From positions 124,001 through 188,000 of IMG/VR virus record IMGVR_UViG_3300032288_004964: a stretch of 64,000 nucleotides of DNA; one strand, 5' to 3'. The notes under the pieces were generated by a model. That model did no database searches. It was given only the letters and a program-made list of their open reading frames with translations, and had not been told where the DNA came from. This document shows, in pieces, positions 1 through 64,000 of the stretch; position 1 is the stretch's first letter, and each line of letters opens with the position of its first letter. The position numbers and the translations under genes are program-made.

Positions 1-1608
1 GGAGGTACTAGTCTAACAGAAGATCCATATTGGTATTCTGGTCAATCTTTACCTTTAATAATTCATAAAGGTGGTGTTGCTGTAATTGGATATAATTGGT
101 ATTGGTCAGGTGTTGCTGATGCTTATTTTGATAGTGCTGTTGGATCATCAACAATATCATTTTTTGATAGTGCTATTGGATTTAGAACAAGACCTGGATC
201 AGGATCTTTTGTTTATAGTATGTTTGTTTATCCAGGATATGTTGTCTTTTCAGATGCTCTAACTAGTGGTTCAACTAAATCTCCTATGATTAGATCTCAA
301 GGATCTACTTCACATTCTACACAAACAACACCAGATTTTACTTGGTACAACAATGATCAAACTGGTATTTTTAGACCATCAGCTAATGTTATAGCTTTTA
401 CTAATGATGGTTCTGAGTCGGCTAGAATTACAGCAGATGGATCTGTTATTATTGGAACATCTACTGTTACTCCTACTCCTATTCATACACTTACTCTTTC
501 TGAATTACTACTTGGTTATTCTAGTATGTTTCCATCTGTTACTCCAAAATTAAATATTCTTGTTGGTAATTCAATCTCAAATTATGAAGAGCTTATGGTT
601 TTAAGAGGACTTAAAGGTTCTGTTAGTAATACATTAACAAGATTAGGTATTATTATGAAACTTTCTGATGAGTATGATGCTAATGAGTCTAGTAAAATGG
701 GTGGTATGATTTTAGAATCAACACAAGGATACTCTAATTCACCATCATTGTATTTGACTACTGCTAATTCAAAAAGATTGGGTATAGATTATTATGGTAA
801 TGTCCTTATTGGAACAACAACTCCATTTTCATTAGGTACTGGTCAGGATTCTTTATTTACTCTTAATGGTACAGCCAGTGTTACTGCTGTATATCATGGC
901 ACTGGAACTAATAATTGGCCATCTATATCTTTTAAAAATGACCAAAGCACTGGTATTTATTGGGCATCTCCTTATACAATTGGTTTCTCTACTGCTGGCT
1001 CTCAAAGAATGACAATCAGTAATAATGTTGGTATTGGTTTATCAAGTCCTACTTATAAACTTACCGTAAATGGTGTAATACAAGGCAAATCTATTACTTC
1101 AAAAGTAGTTAGTGGGACTACATTAAATGTAGGTGGTAGTTTTTATAATGGTGATGTGCATTTATTATTTGGTCAAGTAAATGGGTCTAATAATTCATTT
1201 ATACAATCTACTTCAGGTGATGTGACTTATAGTGGATCTAATATTGGTACAGCTTCTTACACATTGATGTTAAATCCAGGTGGTGGTGTAGTTCAATACT
1301 TGACTGGTAATCTTGTAGCTATATCAGATTCTCGTGAAAAGAGAGATATAAATTATACATTTAATTATGGCTTAGATGAAGTTAATTTATTAAAACCAGC
1401 CACATTCAAATATCTTAACTCTGATGAATCAGTTATGGGATTTGTTGCTCAAGATATTATGGATATAATTCCTGATTTAATTTCTAAATATAAGATATCA
1501 GAAGATGAGGATAGATTATCATTAAAGGAAACTTCAATTATGCCAATTTTAGTAAAGGCTATACAAGAGTTATCAGATAGAGTTAAATACTTAGAATCTA
1601 ATAATTAA
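1..1608 (+). CDS. Tail fibre/spike protein with C-terminal intramolecular chaperone (peptidase S74); 5' partial
   Basis: Frame 1 is open from base 1. Repeated NVGIG/NVLIGTTTP fibre motifs. C-terminal SDSREKRDI...GFVAQD...LVKAIQEL is typical of the S74 autocleavage chaperone. Confidence 0.85.
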   Translation, partial: GGTSLTEDPYWYSGQSLPLIIHKGGVAVIGYNWYWSGVADAYFDSAVGSSTISFFDSAIGFRTRPGSGSFVYSMFVYPGYVVFSDALTSGSTKSPMIRSQGSTSHSTQTTPDFTWYNNDQTGIFRPSANVIAFTNDGSESARITADGSVIIGTSTVTPTPIHTLTLSELLLGYSSMFPSVTPKLNILVGNSISNYEELMVLRGLKGSVSNTLTRLGIIMKLSDEYDANESSKMGGMILESTQGYSNSPSLYLTTANSKRLGIDYYGNVLIGTTTPFSLGTGQDSLFTLNGTASVTAVYHGTGTNNWPSISFKNDQSTGIYWASPYTIGFSTAGSQRMTISNNVGIGLSSPTYKLTVNGVIQGKSITSKVVSGTTLNVGGSFYNGDVHLLFGQVNGSNNSFIQSTSGDVTYSGSNIGTASYTLMLNPGGGVVQYLTGNLVAISDSREKRDINYTFNYGLDEVNLLKPATFKYLNSDESVMGFVAQDIMDIIPDLISKYKISEDEDRLSLKETSIMPILVKAIQELSDRVKYLESNN

Positions 1609-2318: not shown

Positions 2319-2636
2319 ATGAAAATTAGAAAATTTAATGAAGATGAAGAAGTAAATATTTCATCTGAAAGAGTTGATGAAATACTAAAAGAATTAAAAC
2401 AATTCTCATCACAATTAGGTGAAAATTCAAAAATGATGGAATCTCTTATTAATGAGCTTTCTAATTATAAATCAGATACTACTAAAGGTAATGATCAAAT
2501 AGATGATTCTATTGCATCATCACAATTTGTTAAATCAAATATTGATGATGCTATTGATAAAGTAGATAATGTGATAAATAACCTTATGGATTATAATGAT
2601 AAAGGTAGAAAATATTTATACACAGAAAATAAGTAA
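2319..2636 (+). CDS. Coiled-coil hypothetical protein with CTS-like N-terminus
   Basis: Starts MKIRKFNE; heptad pattern. Confidence 0.7.
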   Translation: MKIRKFNEDEEVNISSERVDEILKELKQFSSQLGENSKMMESLINELSNYKSDTTKGNDQIDDSIASSQFVKSNIDDAIDKVDNVINNLMDYNDKGRKYLYTENK

Positions 2637-2641
2637 TTAAT

Positions 2642-3451
2642 ATGAGATTAAAAGAATCATTAAAAGATTTAATAGTAAATTCCGTTTTATATACAATTAC
2701 TTTAATTAGAAGCCTTTTTGGTAAAATGGAAAAGAGTAACTCTAATATTACTTCTAAAATGGAGTTAATATTTGAGGATAATTTTCAATCATTTAATAAA
2801 GATGTTTGGAGAATTGGTCAACCTTGGGGTAAATTTCATCCAGGTTCTCCTTATCAATATTATGGAGATGAATCTGTTTTTATACAAAATGACTGTTTGG
2901 TATTAAATCAGATATATTCACCTAAACAATTAACTACTTGGGAAGATCCTAAAGTATATGATATACCTTACTCTGTTGGATTGATAACATCATATGAAAG
3001 TTATGGATATGGATTTTATGAATTTGAAGTAGAACTACCTTATGGTTCTGGATTATGGCCAGCAGTTTGGTTAAGTTGTGTTGATTCATGGCCTCCTGAA
3101 ATAGATATTATAGAAGCTTACTCTGATAATAAAGCTAATTATAAGAATAACTTACAATCAAATTTTCATTTCAATATGGAAGACAAAAAGGAGTCTTCTG
3201 GTGCTAGAAATCATCCAGTTAATGTTCCATATGATAAATTGAAATTGGGTTGCTGGTGGACTAAGGATTTCATTAAAATCTACTATAATGGACATCTAGT
3301 TAGACAAATTACATCTGATTATATTTTAAAATGGTTTAGAGATAAGAAAATGTTAATTATATTAAACAATGCTATTAGACCAGAATATACTAAGGATATA
3401 GAATCTCAAATTTCAGAATTTAGGATTTATAGTGTAAAAGTATGGAAGTAA
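2642..3451 (+). CDS. Glycoside hydrolase family 16 (laminarinase/beta-glucanase-like)
   Basis: GLWPAVW and WPPEIDIIE (ExDxxE catalytic motif); FEDNF and YGFYE segments. Confidence 0.85.
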   Translation: MRLKESLKDLIVNSVLYTITLIRSLFGKMEKSNSNITSKMELIFEDNFQSFNKDVWRIGQPWGKFHPGSPYQYYGDESVFIQNDCLVLNQIYSPKQLTTWEDPKVYDIPYSVGLITSYESYGYGFYEFEVELPYGSGLWPAVWLSCVDSWPPEIDIIEAYSDNKANYKNNLQSNFHFNMEDKKESSGARNHPVNVPYDKLKLGCWWTKDFIKIYYNGHLVRQITSDYILKWFRDKKMLIILNNAIRPEYTKDIESQISEFRIYSVKVWK

Positions 3452-3714
3452 TCATTGGAAGAAAATCAGATAGTTTGATTGAACAAGGTTATGTTTATGC
3501 TCCTTATATTCCAATTCAAACATCATCTGTTGTAAATGGATATGATTCTAAAAATACAAATAGAAAAAGAAAGATTAATAAGATATTTGGCTTAGGTTTA
3601 AATATTAAAGATGAATTCTTACCAAGTAAATCAATTACAAGTAGATACTCAACAAAGAATATAAATAGTAAATATTACGGAACTATAGAAATTAAAAACA
3701 CCACTCAAATTTGA
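3442..3714 (+). CDS. Small protein resembling the C-terminal segment of T4-like major capsid protein gp23, with an insertion
   Basis: GRK...EQGYVYAPYIP...F.P...ITSRY...YYG matches the gp23 C-terminal pattern GYKG..E.DAG.YYAPY...F.P....TRY (recalled from memory). Confidence 0.65.
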   Translation: MEVIIGRKSDSLIEQGYVYAPYIPIQTSSVVNGYDSKNTNRKRKINKIFGLGLNIKDEFLPSKSITSRYSTKNINSKYYGTIEIKNTTQI

Positions 3715-3744: not shown

Positions 3745-4083
3745 TTATCTAATATATCCTGTTTTTTCTTCACCAGTTTTAAAGTTATAACAAGTTATTG
3801 AATCATGACCTGGTACAACAATAACATCACCAAATACAAATGGATTCATTATATCATATTCAAAAATAGCAACTTCAATTTTACCGTCTTTTACAATAAG
3901 TACAAACTCTCTACCTTCTTCATCAAATCCTTCTTTTAATTCAGAACCATCTGGTAATTTACTCAAATTTCTTCCAATTTCTATTTCACCTTCTATTTCA
4001 TCTGCTGTTAATGATCCTACTAATTTGAATCCTAAATCATCACCAGATTCCATGTCTTCGTTAAATTTTCTTAAGTGTTTCAT
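3745..4083 (-). CDS. Hypothetical protein with CTS-like N-terminus
   Basis: Starts MKHLRKFNED. Confidence 0.7.
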   Translation of the reverse strand: MKHLRKFNEDMESGDDLGFKLVGSLTADEIEGEIEIGRNLSKLPDGSELKEGFDEEGREFVLIVKDGKIEVAIFEYDIMNPFVFGDVIVVPGHDSITCYNFKTGEEKTGYIR

Positions 4084-4113: not shown

Positions 4114-4392
4114 TTATTTCAAATCACTAAGACTCATAATCATTTTTTTAGCTTTTTCGGAAAGACCATTTAAATATTGGTCAACATCTTGAATACTATT
4201 CACATCAGGATATCCATTTAAATCCATTTGCAAATTATCAAATGTAAACTCACCACTTAAACCTCCTTTTTTTAATCCATGTGCAAGTCCTCTATAATAA
4301 GCTTGTTCTATTAAATCGGAAATGTTTTTAATAGTTCTTTCTTCAGCTCTTACGAAGTTAATATCTTCATTGAATTTCTTTAAGTGTTTCAT
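4114..4392 (-). CDS. Hypothetical protein with CTS-like N-terminus
   Basis: Starts MKHLKKFNED. Confidence 0.7.
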   Translation of the reverse strand: MKHLKKFNEDINFVRAEERTIKNISDLIEQAYYRGLAHGLKKGGLSGEFTFDNLQMDLNGYPDVNSIQDVDQYLNGLSEKAKKMIMSLSDLK

Positions 4393-4409: not shown

Positions 4410-4976
4410 CTAGAAATAAGTTTGTTCAAAGTAAAGAACTTCAAATTTATTCTCATGATTTACTAACATTATCGCATTTAATAAGTCAGAATATTCAGCA
4501 ACTGCATCATTTTGAATATTAACATATCCTTGAATAAAATTAAATGTAGCTGGATGAACATTAAGCGATGATTTTTGACCTTCTGAATATTTTCCAAAAA
4601 GACCATATTCCATTTCATAAGCTAAACCAACAATCTCAACTAAATTATTAAATGTTTTTGTAGTTGGAGCTTGTGGTATAACTGGAAGTAAGTTCCATTG
4701 TGTTAAATAATCTTGAAGACCTTTAGCATGTTCTAATTCTGAACTAGCTTCGGCTTCAAAGAAAGAAGCAGCTTTTTTATAGTTCATATTTTTACACCAG
4801 TTAGCAGCGTTTCTATAGAAATAGTGAGCAGTATATTCATCTCCAATTCTATCATTTAGCATTTTTTCAATTGCCTCTGGAAGTACATTAGGTTTAACTA
4901 CACCACCTTCCATTTTTGTTTCTTCTTCTTGTTGAACTTGTGCCTGAGCTTGTGTTCCGAATTTTTTAATTTCCAT
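4410..4976 (-). CDS. Ferritin (non-haem, FtnA-like)
   Basis: LNDRIGDEYTAHYFY...A.FF...ASSELEHA four-helix ferroxidase pattern; Q..AVAE helix. Confidence 0.8.
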   Translation of the reverse strand: MEIKKFGTQAQAQVQQEEETKMEGGVVKPNVLPEAIEKMLNDRIGDEYTAHYFYRNAANWCKNMNYKKAASFFEAEASSELEHAKGLQDYLTQWNLLPVIPQAPTTKTFNNLVEIVGLAYEMEYGLFGKYSEGQKSSLNVHPATFNFIQGYVNIQNDAVAEYSDLLNAIMLVNHENKFEVLYFEQTYF

Positions 4977-4987
4977 GTGTTTGTATT

Positions 4988-5518
4988 TTATTTATTGTAA
5001 GTCAATTTATAAATTGTTCTATAAAGTAAAGCAACAACTTCATCAATTAAATTATGTAGATGTGTGTCTTCTTGTTTAATACAAGTTCTTTCTGTTTTAA
5101 CAAACTCAACAACTTGTTTATAATATTCTAATTTATCAGTTGATTTAGTTTCCTTAGTATCAATTACATCATATTCTTCAATAAGACCGTACTGACCTTG
5201 ATAAGTTTCAACTATTTCATCAATGTGTTCAATTACACCAGTGTAATAAGCTTCTAATGCTAAGTGAGCGGCGTGTGAACCCATATCGCCTTTAACAGTC
5301 CAGTGATAAACTTGAGCCATCTCTCTACTTTCTAATAATTTGGAGATAAACTTAGAAACTGATCCAGCTTCTTTACTTTCTTCTTTTTTATCTTCTGCTT
5401 TCTCTTCCGCTTTTTCTTCAGAACCTTCTGGTAGATTTGCTTTTGGCATACCCGCCATCATATCTTGATCCTCATTTAACTTTTTTAGTGGTGTTTTAAA
5501 ATCTGAAAACTTTTTCAT
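4988..5518 (-). CDS. Dps/ferritin-like four-helix protein (phage type) with CTS-like N-terminus
   Basis: YHWTVKG...HLALEAYY...IDEIVE, a Dps-like HW...H...D...E pattern. Confidence 0.7.
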   Translation of the reverse strand: MKKFSDFKTPLKKLNEDQDMMAGMPKANLPEGSEEKAEEKAEDKKEESKEAGSVSKFISKLLESREMAQVYHWTVKGDMGSHAAHLALEAYYTGVIEHIDEIVETYQGQYGLIEEYDVIDTKETKSTDKLEYYKQVVEFVKTERTCIKQEDTHLHNLIDEVVALLYRTIYKLTYNK

Positions 5519-21061: not shown

Positions 21062-21892
21062 ATGAAATGGACAGACGAAGAAATTGAAATTTTAAAAAAC
21101 AACTATGAACAAGGTGCTAATTATCTGACTTCTTTATTAGAAAGAGATAGATCTTCTATACAACATAAATTAAATAGATTGAGACTCTTTGTATCTAAAG
21201 AAACAAAGTCAAAGATATCAAAAGTGAATTCATCTAAAAGAAAATTTGATGATTCATTTTATTCAGTTTGTGATATAACAAAAAATATTAATGAATACTC
21301 AGCTTATATTTTAGGATTCCTATGGACTGATGGATTTCTTCTGAAAAATAGAAAAACTACAGGTATTACAATTATTAAAGATGATATGATTGAGATAAAT
21401 TGGATATTTAACAAGTTTGGAACTTGGTATTCTCAAGATAGAGTTAGAAAGAATAAAAGAGAGTCTAGTACCTTAACCGCATATAATCCATATCTATTAG
21501 ATAGTTTAATTTCATATGACTTTGATAAAAAATCATATATATCTCCTGAAAAGTTATTTAGTTTAATACCACAAAAGTATTTAAAATATCTAATTAGAGG
21601 TATAATAGATGGTGATGGTTGCTTCTATCTGAATACAAAGAGATATACCTATCAATTAACTATTGCTTCTACATATGAACAGGATTGGTCATTTTATATA
21701 GACTTTTTTAATAAATTAGGATTTGAATTTAAAATACAAAAGAGAATAAATAAAAAAAGTAAATCTTCTATAATAAGATTATGTCAACGCCAAAAGATAT
21801 CTGATCTTTCTAAGTGGTTATATGATGGGTATGAGTTTGATAAAATTGGACTCTCAAGAAAATACAACAAATCTATTTTATTTGATAAATAA
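21062..21892 (+). CDS. Free-standing LAGLIDADG endonuclease
   Basis: AYILGFLWTDG and YLIRGIIDGDG; N-terminal WTDEE HTH-like segment. Confidence 0.85.
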   Translation: MKWTDEEIEILKNNYEQGANYLTSLLERDRSSIQHKLNRLRLFVSKETKSKISKVNSSKRKFDDSFYSVCDITKNINEYSAYILGFLWTDGFLLKNRKTTGITIIKDDMIEINWIFNKFGTWYSQDRVRKNKRESSTLTAYNPYLLDSLISYDFDKKSYISPEKLFSLIPQKYLKYLIRGIIDGDGCFYLNTKRYTYQLTIASTYEQDWSFYIDFFNKLGFEFKIQKRINKKSKSSIIRLCQRQKISDLSKWLYDGYEFDKIGLSRKYNKSILFDK

Positions 21893-21910: not shown

Positions 21911-22516
21911 ATGAATATATGGTTTACATCAGACACACATTTTGGACACACTAACATTGCTGGTCCTAAAATTTCTAATTGGTCTTCAGGATACAGAAAC
22001 TTTAACTCTGTACATGAAATGAATATGACACTTGTTGATGGTATCAACAAATATGTTAAAGAAGATGATATACTTTATCATCTTGGTGATTGGAGCTTTG
22101 GAGGATCTCAAAATATATTTCAATTCAGAAATTATCTTATATGTAAGAATATACACTTGATTTTAGGCAACCATGATCAACATATAGTTGATAAAGAGAT
22201 AAACTATCATGATACATCATTTAATCCAGTTGAACTTTTCTCATCTGTTCAAGATGTTCTAACTTTAGATATTGGTAAAACAAAACTATTTTTATCACAT
22301 TATTCACATAGAGTTTGGTTGGGTAGTCATAAGGGTGTTATACATCTTTATGGCCACTCACACGGATCTATTCCCGATTATGGAAAATCTATGGATGTTG
22401 GTGTTGATGTTGCTTTTAAGAAGTTTGGAGAATATAGACCTTTTAATATTGGCGACATCACTAATATTATGTCAAAGAGAAGTATAGAGAAAATTGATCA
22501 CCACGGAGATATGTAG
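21911..22516 (+). CDS. Calcineurin-like metallophosphoesterase
   Basis: SDTH, LGD, GNHD, SHY, GHSH. Confidence 0.9.
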   Translation: MNIWFTSDTHFGHTNIAGPKISNWSSGYRNFNSVHEMNMTLVDGINKYVKEDDILYHLGDWSFGGSQNIFQFRNYLICKNIHLILGNHDQHIVDKEINYHDTSFNPVELFSSVQDVLTLDIGKTKLFLSHYSHRVWLGSHKGVIHLYGHSHGSIPDYGKSMDVGVDVAFKKFGEYRPFNIGDITNIMSKRSIEKIDHHGDM

Positions 22517-22517
22517 T

Positions 22518-22682
22518 ATGAGAAAATTAGAATCTGAATTATCCTATTATAAAGTTTTAATTAATTCTCAGTATGGTACAAATACCAGTACAACAATGTT
22601 AGATAAAGCCTATCAACTAAGAAGAAAAATTATCACTGTAAAAAATAGAAAAAATAAAATTAAAAAGATATTTAATATATGA
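22518..22682 (+). CDS. Small protein containing family-B DNA polymerase motif B plus R-tag
   Basis: KVLINSQYG (KxxxNSxYG); C-terminal NRKNKIKKIF; start moved to ATG 22518. Confidence 0.55.
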   Translation: MRKLESELSYYKVLINSQYGTNTSTTMLDKAYQLRRKIITVKNRKNKIKKIFNI

Positions 22683-61419: not shown

Positions 61420-64000
61420 ATGTTAAGTAAACTATCAACGCATTTAGGACCAGGTTCTCTCTTTTCAGGAGATGAACCACTAGTATTGGAATTTAGTAAT
61501 TCAACTTGGATAAGTACAAATGTTGGTACTTATTCATTAGTTGATGCTTGGAATGAATTTTTTGTAACCATAGAAACACCATTCAAAGATGTAAGTATTG
61601 ATGGTAATAAAATTTCACTAATTGGTGGTAAAGATTTAGAATTAAAAACTAGTTGTTTTAGTAGTAGTGACTTAGTTTCAATTAAAGATAATTCTAGAAT
61701 AATTACAACATTAGGTACTTATTCATTTGATGATTGTTCATTATTAACAGATGCTACCTTAAAAGGAGTTACTTATTCGTATGGTGGATCTTTTAGAGAT
61801 AATGTGAGTTTAACAACTATAATTCTTCCTAATTTACAAGAGATTTTAGGTGATGGTTATTTCTTTTATAATTGTGGATCTGTTAGTAACTTCAATTTAC
61901 CTTTACTTAATAGTATATCAGGTGTTTCTAACTTTTATAATTGTAATAGTATGTCAACTTTAAATTTACCTGTTTGTACTACTTTAGGTGATACAGTACT
62001 TAATAATGATAACTTTGATTCTATTACTGGTAAAACAATAGATTTGACAGTAACTCCTGAATTACTTACTTGTAATGGTGGTACTCCAGATGTTGATATA
62101 CAATATCTACAATCTAATAACACAGTAACTATTCATATACCAACTTCAATTACTTCATTTACTCCAACATCAGCTACTTTCTCAGGTACAACTGTTAGTG
62201 TTGTGGGTAAAGGATTCTACGCCATTGATTCAGTAAAAATAGGTGGAGTTGAAGTTGCGACTTATTCACTTGATAGTTTTACTAATTTAAGTTTAGTTAC
62301 AGGTACTGTTTCAGATGGTTCTGTTTCAATTACTGGTACTTATGGTTCAGCTTCCAAATCTGGATTTGAATGGGATGCTACCGTTAAGTTTAGTTATATT
62401 GCCACTCCTTTAAATGTTTTACCAAATACTTGGACTGATTTATCGTCTTACTATAAAGATTTAGAAATTAAATCAGGCGTATCACTTGATACACTATATT
62501 CAGTTTTATTTGATGGTAGTAATTCAGGATATGGAACTTCAAGTCAAATGACTGTAAAATACACAAATGGATTTACAATAGAAACTTGGGTTAATTTCTC
62601 ATCATTAACATCTGCTAATTATATAATGCAGTTTGTTGATCAAGATTATACAAATACTAATCCAGATTTAACTCTACTTACTATTGATAATGATTTAAGA
62701 ATTCAATCAAGTAATTCTGTTAGTTTTTCTACTAATATAACTGCTAATAAATTCATCAAGGCTGTTGTTACATATGATTCATCAAATGGTGAAACTAAAA
62801 CATATATAAATGGTCAATTAACAAATACTAGTACACTTAATTTATCCACAAGCTATAAGAAAACAATTGGTAAACTTTTTGTTGGTAATATAGGATCTAA
62901 TCAACCTATGAGAATAGGCATGTTAAACTTTGTAAATTATATACAAGATTCAACAACTATTCTTAATAATTATAACAATGAAAGAAACACTTATGATGAA
63001 GCTAAAGGAAGTTTCTTATTTAATTCATCAAGTAGTCAATACTTATCATCTAGCTCACCTGATTATGTAATTGGTACAAATAGCTTTACTTTAGAAGCAT
63101 TTGTTAAAACAACATCTCAAAGCGGTTATGATGGTGTGATTTCAATGTTAGATAACAATGCTCCATTTAATGGTGTTTCTATTAATATTTTTGATGGTAA
63201 TTTTGACTTCTATTCTAAAGGTGGTCAATATACTTCATATACTGCTTCTAATGATACATGGTACCATGTTGCTATAGCAAGAGATAATGGAACTATAAGT
63301 TATTTTGCTAATGGTAGATTGGTAGCTCAATACTCTGATTCTTATAATTATACTCTTCAAGATTTAGTTATAGGTAGATATTATACAGATCTTAATGACC
63401 ACTATATAGATGGTGTTATTGCACAACCTAGATTAACAATAGGCACTGCATTATATAATGGTACATTTAGTGTAACTCCTCCATTAACAAGCGGTTCTAA
63501 TACTAAATTATTATTATTAGATGCTTATAATAACCAATTATTAGATTCTTCTGGACTTACACACTCTGTTATCTCTAATAATAATGTTGGTTGGACAAGT
63601 AGTTTACCTTCAACTATAGGAAGTACTTATGTACAAGATGCTCTTCAGTTTTATGTAGATGCTTCATTAAATACATCTTATCCTGGTTCAGGTACAATTT
63701 GGTATGATATATCAGGAAACTCAAGAGATCTTTCTTGGGGTTATGGATTAACTTATGATTCTGCAAATGGTGGTAATATTCATTTTGATGGTACTAATAG
63801 AGCACTAAGTGGTTCTAACTATACAATTAACTTCTCTAATGGAATTACGGTTGAGGCGGTTGCTAAATATCATTCAGGTTTTTATGGTGGTGTATTTGCA
63901 TTCAATGGTGGTGGTGACTATATTAATGTTCAATTTATGTCTTCTGGTACACAACTTAGATTTGAGCTTGATGCGGGTCAATCCTTATACACAACTGGAG
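61420..64000 (+). CDS. Adhesin/fibre tip protein: BspA-like LRR, IPT/TIG and LamG domains; 3' partial (absent from the ORF track)
   Basis: ATG 61420 (MLSKLSTHLGP), frame open to window end; F.NC..L....LP repeats; ITSFTPTS...G..VSVVGKGF; FTIETWV/FTLEAFV...WYHVA. Confidence 0.8.
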   Translation, partial: MLSKLSTHLGPGSLFSGDEPLVLEFSNSTWISTNVGTYSLVDAWNEFFVTIETPFKDVSIDGNKISLIGGKDLELKTSCFSSSDLVSIKDNSRIITTLGTYSFDDCSLLTDATLKGVTYSYGGSFRDNVSLTTIILPNLQEILGDGYFFYNCGSVSNFNLPLLNSISGVSNFYNCNSMSTLNLPVCTTLGDTVLNNDNFDSITGKTIDLTVTPELLTCNGGTPDVDIQYLQSNNTVTIHIPTSITSFTPTSATFSGTTVSVVGKGFYAIDSVKIGGVEVATYSLDSFTNLSLVTGTVSDGSVSITGTYGSASKSGFEWDATVKFSYIATPLNVLPNTWTDLSSYYKDLEIKSGVSLDTLYSVLFDGSNSGYGTSSQMTVKYTNGFTIETWVNFSSLTSANYIMQFVDQDYTNTNPDLTLLTIDNDLRIQSSNSVSFSTNITANKFIKAVVTYDSSNGETKTYINGQLTNTSTLNLSTSYKKTIGKLFVGNIGSNQPMRIGMLNFVNYIQDSTTILNNYNNERNTYDEAKGSFLFNSSSSQYLSSSSPDYVIGTNSFTLEAFVKTTSQSGYDGVISMLDNNAPFNGVSINIFDGNFDFYSKGGQYTSYTASNDTWYHVAIARDNGTISYFANGRLVAQYSDSYNYTLQDLVIGRYYTDLNDHYIDGVIAQPRLTIGTALYNGTFSVTPPLTSGSNTKLLLLDAYNNQLLDSSGLTHSVISNNNVGWTSSLPSTIGSTYVQDALQFYVDASLNTSYPGSGTIWYDISGNSRDLSWGYGLTYDSANGGNIHFDGTNRALSGSNYTINFSNGITVEAVAKYHSGFYGGVFAFNGGGDYINVQFMSSGTQLRFELDAGQSLYTTG

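What the first reader, a model, noticed from the sequence alone, without database searches (positions are those of the whole stretch)
3442..3714. Stand-alone 90-aa major-capsid C-terminal fragment with the tag inserted in a loop
GRK...EQGYVYAPYIP and F.P..SITSRY...YYGTIEI flank an insertion containing NRKRKINKIFG. The insertion sits where gp23 has a short turn, so the ORF looks like a rebuilt minimal capsid sub-domain displaying the tag, not a truncation. It lies far from the structural genes and is translationally coupled to a GH16 gene.
Basis: partly seen in the sequence, partly recalled or inferred. Interest (0 to 1): 0.75.

Follow-up and report, generated by a model that had tools for sequence, protein, structure and literature searches.

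The report
Tagged capsid-fragment mini-protein in jumbo phage
A freshwater giant phage keeps a conserved 90-residue gene made of the last two conserved blocks of a T4-type capsid protein wrapped around a short shared peptide tag, and it is one of about ten such tagged fragment genes per genome, a kind of gene set I could not find described anywhere.

Summary
ORF 3442-3714 (+) is real. It overlaps the GH16 gene stop by 10 nt (ATGGAAGTAA) and belongs to a conserved stand-alone family of 78-123 aa proteins, found only in uncultured AT-rich freshwater jumbo phages. Its two halves match the C-terminus of canonical T4-type major capsid proteins (profile-profile E 1e-20). They barely match the phage's own divergent capsid protein (E 8e-4). 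The tag lies in a 22-residue insert at a short loop.

AlphaFold gives no autonomous fold; only the tag is confidently helical. Relatives include circularly permuted and mosaic versions.

The tag, R-K-x-[KS]-I-x-[KRN]-[IL]-[FY], occurs 39 times in five related genomes, always in ORFs of 33-90 aa and mostly at the C-terminus. It never occurs in reversed controls. Its carriers are fragments of capsid, portal, prohead protease, tail sheath, and probably PolB, terminase and helicase.

The tag has the spacing and placement of T4 sliding-clamp-binding tails. One tagged ORF sits where the late sigma factor's clamp-binding tail should be.

Best reading: a disordered two-part peptide, with a hub-docking tag (probably clamp-binding) plus capsid-mimic blocks, acting in trans. 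Its biological role is not shown.

The parts
3442..3714 (+). 90-aa ORF: stand-alone capsid-C-terminus-like mini-protein with an internal tag
3448..3540 (+). Block 1 (residues 3-33, IIGRKSDSLIEQGYVYAPYIPIQTSSVV). Matches the canonical gp23-type strand region (LIGHKG..GYVYAPYIPLQ).
3541..3606 (+). 22-residue insert relative to capsid proteins (residues 34-55, YDSKNTNRKRKINKIFGLGLNI)
   Evidence: The insertion point corresponds to the coil at residues 449-454 of the P0166 model.
3562..3588 (+). Tag core RKRKINKIF (residues 41-49), an instance of R[KRM].[KS][IL].[KRN][IL][FY]. It forms the C-terminal part of the only confident helix (residues 37-49).
3607..3699 (+). Block 2 (residues 56-86, KDEFLPSKSITSRYSTKNINSKYYGTIEIKN). 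Matches canonical DDFTPRKGIMTRYAKKMVNNRFYG.I.V.
2642..3451 (+). Upstream GH16-family gene whose stop overlaps the ORF's start. This neighbourhood is not conserved in relatives.
2319..2636 (+). 105-aa coiled-coil gene (MKIRKFNEDE...). It is the conserved upstream neighbour of the family in all relatives examined.
22494..22682 (+). Second tagged mini-ORF in the window (62 aa). It carries a PolB motif-B-like K...NS.YG and the C-terminal tag RKNKIKKIFNI*. Orthologues are in G001 and G004.
   Evidence: Neither Pfam nor tblastn supports the PolB assignment; it rests on the motif and its conservation.

Best explanation
The ORF encodes a conserved, largely disordered two-part peptide. It belongs to a clade-wide set of 'tagged hallmark-fragment' mini-proteins in AT-rich freshwater jumbo myophages.

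Part one is mimicry. The ORF carries the two most conserved C-terminal sequence blocks of a canonical T4-type (gp23) major capsid protein. These blocks are not those of the phage's own, very different capsid protein.

Part two is a 9-residue helical short linear motif, R-K-x-[KS]-I-x-[KRN]-[IL]-[FY], placed in the loop between the blocks. About 8-12 other 33-90 aa ORFs per genome carry the same motif, usually at their C-terminus. Their N-terminal parts are fragments of capsid (spine helix, A-domain), portal, prohead protease and tail sheath. By motif only, others look like PolB, terminase and replicative helicase.

I infer that the tag docks all these peptides onto one common hub. The most likely hub is the phage's sliding clamp, as the [ST]LDFL[FYL] tails of T4 gp43, gp55 and gp33 do. 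The fragment part would then present a linear copy of a conserved segment of a T4-type protein to whatever normally binds that segment. On this reading the protein acts in trans as an adaptor, competitor or decoy, and is not a building block of the capsid.

Shown: existence, conservation, homology, the insertion, the helix, the shared motif and its statistics, and a closer likeness to canonical than to the resident capsid protein.

Inferred: hub binding, the clamp as the hub, and mimicry as the mode of action.

Not established: the ultimate biological role. Candidates are regulation of late functions, interference with co-infecting T4-like phages, or decoying host sensors.
For: Conserved stand-alone family:
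- 261 clusters of 78-123 aa and 432 profile hits.
- 19 IMG/VR loci on contigs of 5-476 kb, the clear family members on 34-476 kb contigs.
- dN/dS about 0.43.

Homology to the canonical capsid C-terminus, not the own one:
- hhalign E 1.1e-20 against canonical versus 7.9e-4 against own-type.
- BLASTP E 1e-14 to 6e-11 versus 0.02.
- GYVYAPYIP is identical in 103 of 128 canonical capsid proteins and in 0 of 120 own-type ones.
- In cultured phages the only matches are annotated capsid C-termini.

The tag is inserted at a loop.

No autonomous fold: the only confident element is a helix at the tag.

The tag is a real shared motif:
- HMM at 7 bits or more: 48 ORFs in 5 genomes versus 1 in reversed sequences.
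- Strict pattern: 39 hits, all in ORFs of 33-90 aa, 0 in reversed sequences, mean 0.5 in shuffles; 32 of 39 lie within 12 residues of the C-terminus.
- Codons of the tag differ between carriers, so conservation is at protein level.

Carriers are fragments of hallmark proteins:
- Gp23 model 139-185, E 1.5e-8; model 154-194, E 8.6e-7; model 222-259, E 0.01.
- Portal_T4 model 387-427, E 0.003.
- The 62-aa ORF matches only gp21-like prohead protease genes in 24 phage records, each match weak.
- The sheath-like ORF hits the N-terminus of the own 1314-aa ORF that I take to be the tail sheath (size and N-terminal motif only; no family search was run), E 9e-4.
- Relatives carry the same repertoire.

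Clamp-binding analogy:
- T4 tails read from the T4 record are gp43 KASLDFLFG*, gp55 SPSLDFLYEAND* and gp33 TNTLDFLL*. They have the same K-x-S-h-x-x-h-aromatic spacing as RKKSINKIF.
- The gp55-like late sigma gene (PHROG 234, E 4e-7; T4 gp55, E 0.003) stops at profile position 106 of 181. A 58-aa ORF ending RKEKIQNIF... overlaps it, in this genome and in G004.
- The C-terminal PolB half found in G002 ends ...KRLSVVMDIFSGF....
- A gp44-like clamp loader is present.

Permuted and mosaic relatives argue for linear-motif function.
Against: - No sliding clamp gene was recognised in the genome.
- The tag is basic whereas T4 clamp-binding tails are acidic. It also lacks the Q and the second aromatic residue of a strict PIP box.
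- In this particular ORF the tag is internal, with 41 residues after it.
- The only complex prediction I could run gave no answer and did not test the clamp. It combined the own and canonical capsid bodies lacking their C-termini with the 90-aa protein.
- About half of the tagged ORFs have no recognisable parent. The 'hallmark fragment' pattern is therefore partly an ascertainment effect.
- The PolB, terminase and helicase assignments rest on short motifs only.
- Nothing shows that the protein is made: no RNA run could be listed.
- Synonymous sites are unusually conserved. This is unexplained and could point to a constraint that is not on the protein.
Confidence: 0.4

Rival explanations
1. Inter-phage weapon. 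The tagged fragments are natural dominant-negative peptides, like 'genetic suppressor elements'. They would poison folding or assembly of canonical T4-like phages that co-infect the same host. The jumbo phage's own divergent proteins would be immune. This is a specific version of the mimicry reading.
For: - The fragment is much closer to canonical T4-type capsid proteins than to the resident one.
- The same holds for the spine-helix pieces: Pfam E 1.5e-8 versus own capsid protein E 0.4.
- dN/dS is fairly high, 0.5-0.8, in close pairs while motif residues stay fixed.
- The targets would be several essential proteins.
Against: - Some carriers hold buried catalytic motifs (Walker A and B, PolB motif B). 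These are not assembly interfaces.
- The PolB piece continues the clade's own split PolB (...KQLEAEL* and then RKLESEL...). It therefore derives from the clade's own gene, not from a competitor's.
- No co-infecting T4-like phage is known.
- The complex prediction gave no answer.
Confidence: 0.2
2. Localisation tag rather than clamp tag. The basic amphipathic helix would send the peptides to the inner membrane (like the C-terminal MinD membrane-targeting sequence). Alternatively it would send them into the prohead or scaffold, like a capsid-targeting sequence. On that reading the protein is an accessory of head assembly or a packaged internal protein.
For: - The helix is cationic with 3-4 hydrophobic residues.
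- The flanking genes have MK..KKFNE N-termini that resemble the T4 capsid-targeting sequence (the resemblance is from memory).
- One relative (P0198) carries a transmembrane segment after the capsid-like unit.
- The tag also resembles the canonical capsid N-arm motif FP[IM]VRR[VI]F[GS].LL.
Against: - R at -4, K at -3 and I at 0 are almost invariant across unrelated carriers. That fits a specific protein pocket better than generic lipid binding.
- The fragments resemble canonical proteins, not the own structural proteins they would have to co-assemble with.
- The ORF has no prohead-protease-type N-terminal signal.
Confidence: 0.15
3. One reading: a rebuilt, autonomously folding minimal capsid sub-domain that displays the tag. 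A related version sees it as a piece of a capsid protein encoded 'in pieces', which reassembles with the other capsid fragments.
For: - The insert lies in a loop between two strands.
- The residues that are invariant in capsid proteins are kept.
- Other capsid pieces exist in the genome: N-terminal 139 aa, spine helix twice, A-domain.
- Circular permutants exist, as can happen with true domains.
Against: - AlphaFold pTM is 0.27, with no tertiary packing.
- The three strands belong to two different sheets of the HK97 fold (general knowledge of the fold).
- There are mosaics with protease and spine-helix pieces inside the unit.
- The pieces are scattered over 260 kb and cover only part of a capsid protein.
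- A complete capsid gene is present.
Confidence: 0.08
4. Genetic debris. The ORF would be a relic of a displaced or captured canonical capsid gene, carried along in a plastic, homing-endonuclease-rich region. It would have no function of its own, or would function only at the DNA or RNA level.
For: - Endonuclease-like genes lie nearby in some relatives (DUF723 in L011). A gene that looks like a LAGLIDADG endonuclease, by motif only, lies next to the second tagged ORF.
- Synonymous divergence is half that of the neighbouring gene, and minor codons are fixed. This could mean recent horizontal spread or a nucleotide-level constraint.
Against: - The frame, length and motif residues are kept in hundreds of variants down to about 35% identity, in a genome where random frames close after about 12 codons.
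- dN/dS is below 1.
- There is no nucleotide-level likeness to canonical capsid genes: 55-57% identity, third positions not conserved, and no exact 26-mer elsewhere.
- Tag codons vary between carriers.
Confidence: 0.07
5. Immune decoy. The peptides would copy the conserved segments of phage proteins that bacterial sensors recognise, and would soak up or mislead those sensors. Known sensed proteins include terminase and portal for Avs, and capsid for CapRel or Lit-Gol.
For: - The parent proteins (capsid, portal, terminase, polymerase, helicase, sheath) overlap with known triggers of bacterial defence (established literature).
- In T4 a short linear capsid segment, the Gol peptide, is read in trans together with EF-Tu (PMC3014915).
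- The blocks are consensus-like.
Against: - Known sensors mostly recognise folded surfaces.
- The phage's own proteins are already divergent.
- No sensor or host is known.
- A Gol-like peptide would activate a Lit-type protease rather than block it.
Confidence: 0.1

Closest known systems
C-terminus of T4-type major capsid proteins (Pfam PF07068 Gp23; T4 gp23 and gp24)
   Same: The two blocks are homologous to the last ~65 residues of canonical gp23-type proteins. The same invariant residues are kept (G-Y-V-Y-A-P-Y, S/T-R-Y, Y-Y-G).
   Different: - It covers only 75 of 376 model positions.
- It has a 22-residue insert.
- It shows no fold of its own.
- It is a stand-alone gene 96 kb from the real capsid gene.
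- It is closer to other phages' capsid proteins than to its own genome's.
Sliding-clamp-binding tails of T4 gp43, gp55 and gp33 ([ST]LDFL[FYL]); PIP-box-like motifs
   Same: - It is a short motif shared by unrelated proteins and mostly at the extreme C-terminus.
- The spacing is the same: K/S at -3, S at -1, then h-x-x-h-aromatic.
- One carrier sits where the late sigma factor's tail should be.
   Different: - The context is basic rather than acidic.
- No clamp has been identified.
- Binding has not been tested.
- In this ORF the motif is internal.
- The carriers are gene fragments rather than enzymes or transcription factors.
Dominant-negative gene fragments ('genetic suppressor elements', pathogen-derived resistance such as Gag-derived restriction factors)
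   Same: Short expressed pieces of essential viral proteins that could act by competing with the full-length protein. This is a conceptual likeness only.
   Different: Those are experimental constructs or host-captured viral genes. Here a virus itself carries a conserved, tagged set of such pieces, and no interference has been shown.
Gol peptide of T4 gp23
   Same: It is a precedent that a ~29-residue linear segment of a T4-type capsid protein has a specific partner in trans, namely EF-Tu and the Lit protease (PMC3014915).
   Different: Gol is the N-arm region inside the full-length protein, not the C-terminus and not a separate gene. The tag resembles its first half only loosely.
Genes in pieces in T4-like phages (split gp43, split NrdA, gp39/gp60)
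   Same: The same genomes have a split PolB. The 43A-like ORF ends just before motif B in all five genomes.
   Different: Split genes give two halves that together make the whole enzyme. The tagged ORFs hold 20-65 residues of the parent and cannot rebuild it.

Membership tests
Pfam PF07068 (Gp23 major capsid protein) | Score at or above the curated gathering cut-off (24.4 bits) | tested here: not met
   23.9 bits, E 3.4e-5. A few relatives carry a precomputed PF07068 hit (P0046, P0067).
Pfam PF07068 (Gp23 major capsid protein) | Homology to the family over an aligned region | tested here: met
   Model positions 303-376. hhalign against the canonical clade gives E 1.1e-20. The family profile hits full-length capsid proteins.
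Pfam PF07068 (Gp23 major capsid protein) | Complete HK97-type fold (N-arm, E-loop, spine helix, P and A domains) able to form a shell | tested here: not met
   The ORF has only the last ~65 residues plus an insert. AlphaFold pTM is 0.27.
T4-type clamp-binding tail proteins (gp43, gp55, gp33) | Motif [ST]-L-D-F-L-[FYL] at or near the C-terminus | tested here: inconclusive
   The spacing matches and S at -1 is frequent, but the residues differ (I-N-K-I-F). 32 of 39 motif copies are C-terminal, but not in this ORF.
T4-type clamp-binding tail proteins (gp43, gp55, gp33) | A gp45-type clamp encoded by the phage, and binding to it | tested here: inconclusive
   A clamp loader homologue was found (phmmer E 1e-21). 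No clamp was recognised by Pfam, phmmer, tblastn-type search or PHROGs on the neighbouring genes. Binding could not be tested.
Canonical PIP box | Q-x-x-[ILM]-x-x-[FY]-[FY] | tested here: not met
   K replaces Q and [IL] replaces the first aromatic residue. The spacing alone is kept.
MinD-type membrane-targeting sequence | Amphipathic helix at the extreme C-terminus, tolerant of sequence change | tested here: inconclusive
   A helix is predicted. It is internal in this ORF, and positions -4, -3, 0, +3 and +4 are nearly invariant across carriers. Membrane binding cannot be tested with these tools.
T4 capsid-targeting sequence proteins (internal head proteins) | N-terminal ~10-residue signal ending in a prohead-protease site ([LI]-x-E) | tested here: not met
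   The ORF starts MEVIIGRKS. The MK..KKFNE signature is on neighbouring genes, not on this one.
Pseudogene or decaying gene remnant | Broken or variable frame, no purifying selection, no conservation as a unit | tested here: not met
   Length and frame are kept in hundreds of clusters. dN/dS is 0.43.
In-frame mobile DNA insertion (Rickettsia palindromic element type) | Insert conserved at the nucleotide level between copies, palindromic | tested here: not met
   Tag codons differ between the seven copies in this genome.

The most novel reading that the evidence does not exclude
A large clade of freshwater jumbo phages maintains a library of about ten small peptides per genome. Each is a copy of a highly conserved segment of a T4-type core protein (capsid, portal, protease, sheath, polymerase, terminase, helicase) fused to one shared docking motif. 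The phage would use this library for molecular mimicry, either to sabotage co-infecting T4-like phages or to blind host sensors of conserved phage proteins. That would be a protein-level counterpart of virus-borne mini-CRISPR arrays in conflicts between viruses.
Probability: 0.25. Interest if true: 0.9.

Novelty: categorically new. Interest (0 to 1): 0.8.

Why it matters
If the set of tagged fragments is functional, it is a new way for a virus to use pieces of conserved viral proteins. Its own capsid-type gene family would become a source of trans-acting peptides that share one docking signal.

It would give a defined 9-residue motif and about ten natural carriers per genome to test for a common partner. 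It would also open questions about clamp-centred regulation, or competition between phages, in an abundant but uncultured clade. The resident capsid type of that clade has about 2000 clusters at 90% identity, on contigs up to 611 kb.

It matters for annotation as well. Weak Gp23, portal or polymerase hits on 40-90 aa ORFs in jumbo phages should not be dismissed as noise, nor called structural genes.

Tried and rejected
- Solved structures: a profile of the family found nothing relevant in PDB sequences.
- ESM Atlas: only unnamed viral clusters below the useful score.
- Complex prediction: own capsid body (41-491) plus canonical capsid body (P0166 1-417) plus the 90-aa protein gave 'no answer', score 0.00. 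It is evidence for nothing. This used the single job, so the clamp idea could not be modelled.
- Guide RNA or recombination template idea: rejected. No exact 26-mer occurs elsewhere in IMG/VR. Nucleotide identity to two canonical capsid genes is 55-57%, with third positions not conserved.
- Mobile in-frame DNA element: rejected, because tag codons vary.
- Recent duplicate of the own capsid gene: rejected.
- GH16 as a functional partner: rejected as a general feature, because it is absent in several relatives.
- Promoter, terminator and TATAAATA scans: uninformative in this AT-rich sequence.
- RNA evidence: no RNA run could be listed. DNA runs place the phage in lakes, groundwater and drinking water.
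- The search for related loci with single short mini-ORFs: found almost nothing because it needs exact 8-mers. I fetched four whole relatives instead.
- Clamp search: Pfam gp45 families, T4 gp45 by phmmer and by genome search, and PHROGs on genes around the replication module were all negative. A 257-aa clamp-like candidate next to the PolB C-terminal half in G002 had no Pfam hit and no orthologue in the other genomes.
- Terminase-like and PolB-like mini-ORFs: no tblastn or Pfam support. They rest on motifs conserved between orthologues.
- Literature: four full-text searches found no description of such fragment genes.
Full report
**What is at the coordinates.** The window is bases 124001-188000 of a 385,333-bp IMG/VR virus record (28.7% GC, 95% complete). 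ORF 3442..3714 (+) encodes 90 residues. Its ATG lies within the last codons of a GH16-family gene (2642..3451; PF00722, E 3.6e-12; ATGGAAGTAA overlap). Upstream on the same strand is a 105-aa coiled-coil gene, and genes on the opposite strand flank the trio.

**Is the capsid likeness real?** Yes.
- Pfam Gp23 aligns residues 3-84 to model positions 303-376 of 376. E is 3.4e-5 and the score of 23.9 bits is just under the 24.4 cut-off.
- A profile of 25 family members, searched against 1.8 billion representative proteins, gave 432 hits. Full-length capsid proteins of 450-640 aa were matched in two stretches (profile 3-33 and 57-85) on either side of the tag.
- hhalign of the small family against 43 canonical T4-type capsid proteins gave probability 99.3% and E 1.1e-20. 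Identity was 39% over 66 columns, with the query's residues 34-55 unaligned.
- In GenBank phages the only matches are the C-termini of annotated major capsid proteins: Microcystis Mel-JY01, Flavobacterium immuto and Bacillus SP-15.
- An AlphaFold model of a canonical relative (P0166, pLDDT 74.6) puts the insertion point in a 6-residue coil (449-454) between two strands. The 'short turn' statement therefore holds.

**It is a gene, not a remnant.**
- A word-indexed search restricted to similar lengths found 261 clusters of 78-123 aa at 67-99% identity.
- The profile search added many more divergent members, down to about 35% identity, with the same length and motifs.
- Nineteen IMG/VR loci carry it.
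- Pairwise dN/dS is about 0.43.
- All clear members sit on AT-rich contigs, many of 90-476 kb. DNA runs holding the locus come from lake, groundwater, drinking-water and plankton metagenomes.
- The conserved neighbour is the 105-aa gene, not GH16. Several relatives lack GH16 and have other mini-ORFs there instead.

**It is not derived from the resident capsid gene.**
- The genome's capsid protein (560 aa, genome 30982-32664) belongs to a large, well-conserved lineage of its own. That lineage has about 2000 clusters, the listed ones at 74-100% identity, and is only 15-21% identical to canonical T4-type proteins.
- BLASTP of the ORF gives E 0.02 against its own capsid protein, but 1e-14 to 6e-11 against canonical ones.
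- hhalign gives E 7.9e-4 against own-type versus 1.1e-20 against canonical.
- The 9-mer GYVYAPYIP is identical in 103 of 128 canonical proteins. The own lineage has IIFVPYLMA at that place.

**No autonomous fold.** AlphaFold2 with a 52-row alignment gave pLDDT 67 and pTM 0.27. The only confident element is a helix at residues 37-49, which is the tag; the capsid-like blocks come out extended. Among 270 collected proteins the architectures were as follows:

| Count | Architecture |
|---|---|
| 146 | block1-tag-block2 (this ORF's type) |
| 17 | circularly permuted, block2-block1 (tag then at the C-terminus when present) |
| 12 | other long inserts |
| 2 | both blocks followed by a C-terminal tag |

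Some relatives are mosaics:
- a spine helix inside the unit (P0212);
- a prohead-protease motif inside it (P0218);
- the N-arm region fused to it (P0207, P0235, P0270).

Order and context are therefore free, which suggests linear motifs rather than a domain.

**The tag is a genome-wide motif.** In this genome the exact pentapeptide INKIF occurs four times in six frames. Three of those are in small ORFs that Pfam calls Gp23 fragments.
- An HMM of the tag scores 7 bits or more in 48 ORFs of five related genomes. I fetched four relatives whole for this. The reversed control gave 1.
- The strict pattern R[KRM].[KS][IL].[KRN][IL][FY] occurs 39 times, always in ORFs of 33-90 aa. It never occurs in reversed sequences and averages 0.5 in shuffles. 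In 32 of 39 cases it lies within 12 residues of the C-terminus.
- Codons differ between copies, so the conservation is in the peptide.
- Several carriers form arrays of two or three overlapping ORFs: genome 342282-342796, G001 434186-434657, G004 62818-63326.

**What the carriers are.** Tool-supported identities:
- Capsid spine helix: 67 aa with E 1.5e-8, and 86 aa with E 8.6e-7.
- Capsid A-domain piece: 61 aa, E 0.01.
- Portal C-terminus: 53 aa, Portal_T4 model 387-427, E 0.003.
- Prohead protease: 62 aa. All 24 tblastn matches fall in gp21-like genes, though each is weak.
- Tail-sheath N-terminus: 80 aa, E 9e-4 to the start of the own 1314-aa ORF that I take to be the sheath on its size and N-terminal motif; no family search was run on it. 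Here the tag again lies between two conserved blocks.

Identities by motif conserved among orthologues only:
- PolB motif B (K...NS.YG; window 22494..22682).
- Terminase Walker A (ARQTGKS).
- DnaB-type Walker B (DIIIVDHI).

Pfam and tblastn did not confirm these three. About half of the tagged ORFs are unrecognisable, so the 'conserved block' pattern is partly what one is able to recognise. Relatives G001-G005 each have one full capsid gene or capsid-length Gp23 match where the record holds it (G001, G002, G004; in G002 the match crosses two stop codons). All five also have several small Gp23-fragment ORFs, and a ~260-aa paralogue was detected in G001 and G004.

**What the tag resembles.** I read the T4 record directly. 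The tails are gp43 ...EEKASLDFLFG*, gp55 ...SPSLDFLYEAND* and gp33 ...TNTLDFLL*. These are the classical sliding-clamp-binding tails, one short motif shared by three unrelated proteins (established T4 biology).
- The tag has the same spacing: K at -3, often S at -1, then h-x-x-h-aromatic. Compare RKKSINKIF, RMNSINKIF and RKRKINKIF. Its C-terminal placement is also the same.
- The genome's gp55-like late sigma factor (108 aa; PHROG 234, E 4e-7, profile 50-106 of 181; T4 gp55, E 0.003) ends before the part that carries the tail in T4. A 58-aa ORF overlaps its end and finishes RKEKIQNIFKIKNPLN*. The same pair exists in G004.
- PolB is split in this clade. The N-terminal ORF stops just before motif B in all five genomes. 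The C-terminal half was found only in G002 (PF00136, E 3.5e-20) and ends ...KRLSVVMDIFSGFGKGGF*.
- A gp44-like clamp loader is present, but I could not recognise a clamp.
- The clamp reading is therefore an inference from pattern, position and gene context, not a test.
- Other readings of a basic amphipathic helix remain open: membrane, scaffold, or the capsid N-arm motif FP[IM]VRR[VI]F[GS].LL.

**How it most likely works.** The protein is a disordered two-part peptide. The tag helix docks it on a hub shared with the other tagged ORFs, most probably the sliding clamp. The two blocks present a linear copy of the most conserved C-terminal segments of T4-type capsid proteins. It then acts in trans on whatever binds those segments. 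I cannot decide which partner that is: a regulatory partner, the capsid protein of a competing T4-like phage, or a host sensor.
- Against pure assembly interference: some carriers hold buried catalytic motifs, and the PolB piece continues the clade's own split gene.
- Against a role with the phage's own capsid: the blocks resemble canonical rather than resident sequences.

**Unexplained.** Synonymous divergence of the gene is about half that of its neighbour in the same genome pairs: 27% versus 56% of four-fold sites differ. Minor codons are fixed (Y79 TAC, K72 AAG, K44 AAG, P87 CCC). Recent spread between genomes, high expression or an RNA-level constraint could each explain this. A nucleotide-level relation to canonical capsid genes is excluded for the cases tested.

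**Comparison with what is known, and novelty.** The ORF is homologous to part of the Gp23 family but is not a capsid protein. It fails the family cut-off narrowly and lacks the fold. The tag works like, but is not shown to be, a T4-type clamp-binding tail, and it is not a canonical PIP box. Four full-text searches found no description of tagged fragment genes of this kind. I therefore rate the gene set as categorically new. The caveat is that function is inferred and nothing shows expression.

Noticed in passing
window 2319-2636 (+), 3745-4083 (-), 4114-4392 (-), 4988-5518 (-), and about 14 more ORFs across the genome: About 18 ORFs begin MK[HY][LI][KR][KR][FY]NE.... This resembles the 10-residue capsid-targeting sequence of T4 internal proteins, which ends in a prohead-protease site (from memory). 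These may be processed, packaged head proteins. Two clusters of them lie next to tagged fragment ORFs.
   Followed up: partly
genome 100317-102017 (outside the window); G002 317542-318975 (L084:17542-18972): PolB is a split gene in this clade. The N-terminal ORF ends ...EIKQLEAEL* just before motif B in all five genomes. The C-terminal half (motifs B and C, thumb) was found only in G002. G000, G001 and G004 carry the tagged motif-B mini-ORF instead.
   Followed up: partly
genome 41205-41667 (-) (L112:208-667): The gp55-like late sigma factor gene is truncated relative to the PHROG profile. A 58-aa tagged ORF in the +1 frame overlaps it by 41 nt. This could be a two-subunit arrangement or a programmed frameshift.
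   Followed up: partly
window 21062-21892 (+): A 276-aa ORF with two LAGLIDADG-like motifs (LGFLWTDG, IIDGDG). It looks like a free-standing homing endonuclease and lies two genes upstream of the second tagged mini-ORF. This is by eye only.
   Followed up: no
window 4410-4976 (-) and 4988-5518 (-): Adjacent ferritin (PF00210, E 1.5e-19) and DUF5856 (Dps-like) genes in a phage genome.
   Followed up: no
L026:3709-4541 and L030:3721-4517: A different jumbo-phage lineage also has small ORFs made of capsid pieces (C-terminal block, E-loop strand plus spine helix). They carry another shared tag, DP[VI]EKLMKKIGYE, sometimes twice per ORF. The phenomenon may therefore have arisen more than once.
   Followed up: partly
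window 3442-3714 compared with 2319-2636, across 11 related loci: Four-fold sites differ in 27% of comparisons in the 90-aa gene against 56% in the adjacent 105-aa gene. Several minor codons are fixed. This is unexplained.
   Followed up: partly
genome 84933-85721 (-) and 190610-191029 (+) (L005, L006): A 262-aa short capsid paralogue (present in G001 and G004 too; possible vertex protein) and a 139-aa ORF resembling the capsid N-terminus without a tag. The latter lies directly upstream of the sheath-like tagged ORF.
   Followed up: no
window 220-1608 (+): A tail-fibre-like protein with a C-terminal Peptidase_S74 intramolecular chaperone domain (PF13884, E 1.1e-8), 1.8 kb upstream of the ORF. 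The region is therefore not free of structural genes.
   Followed up: no
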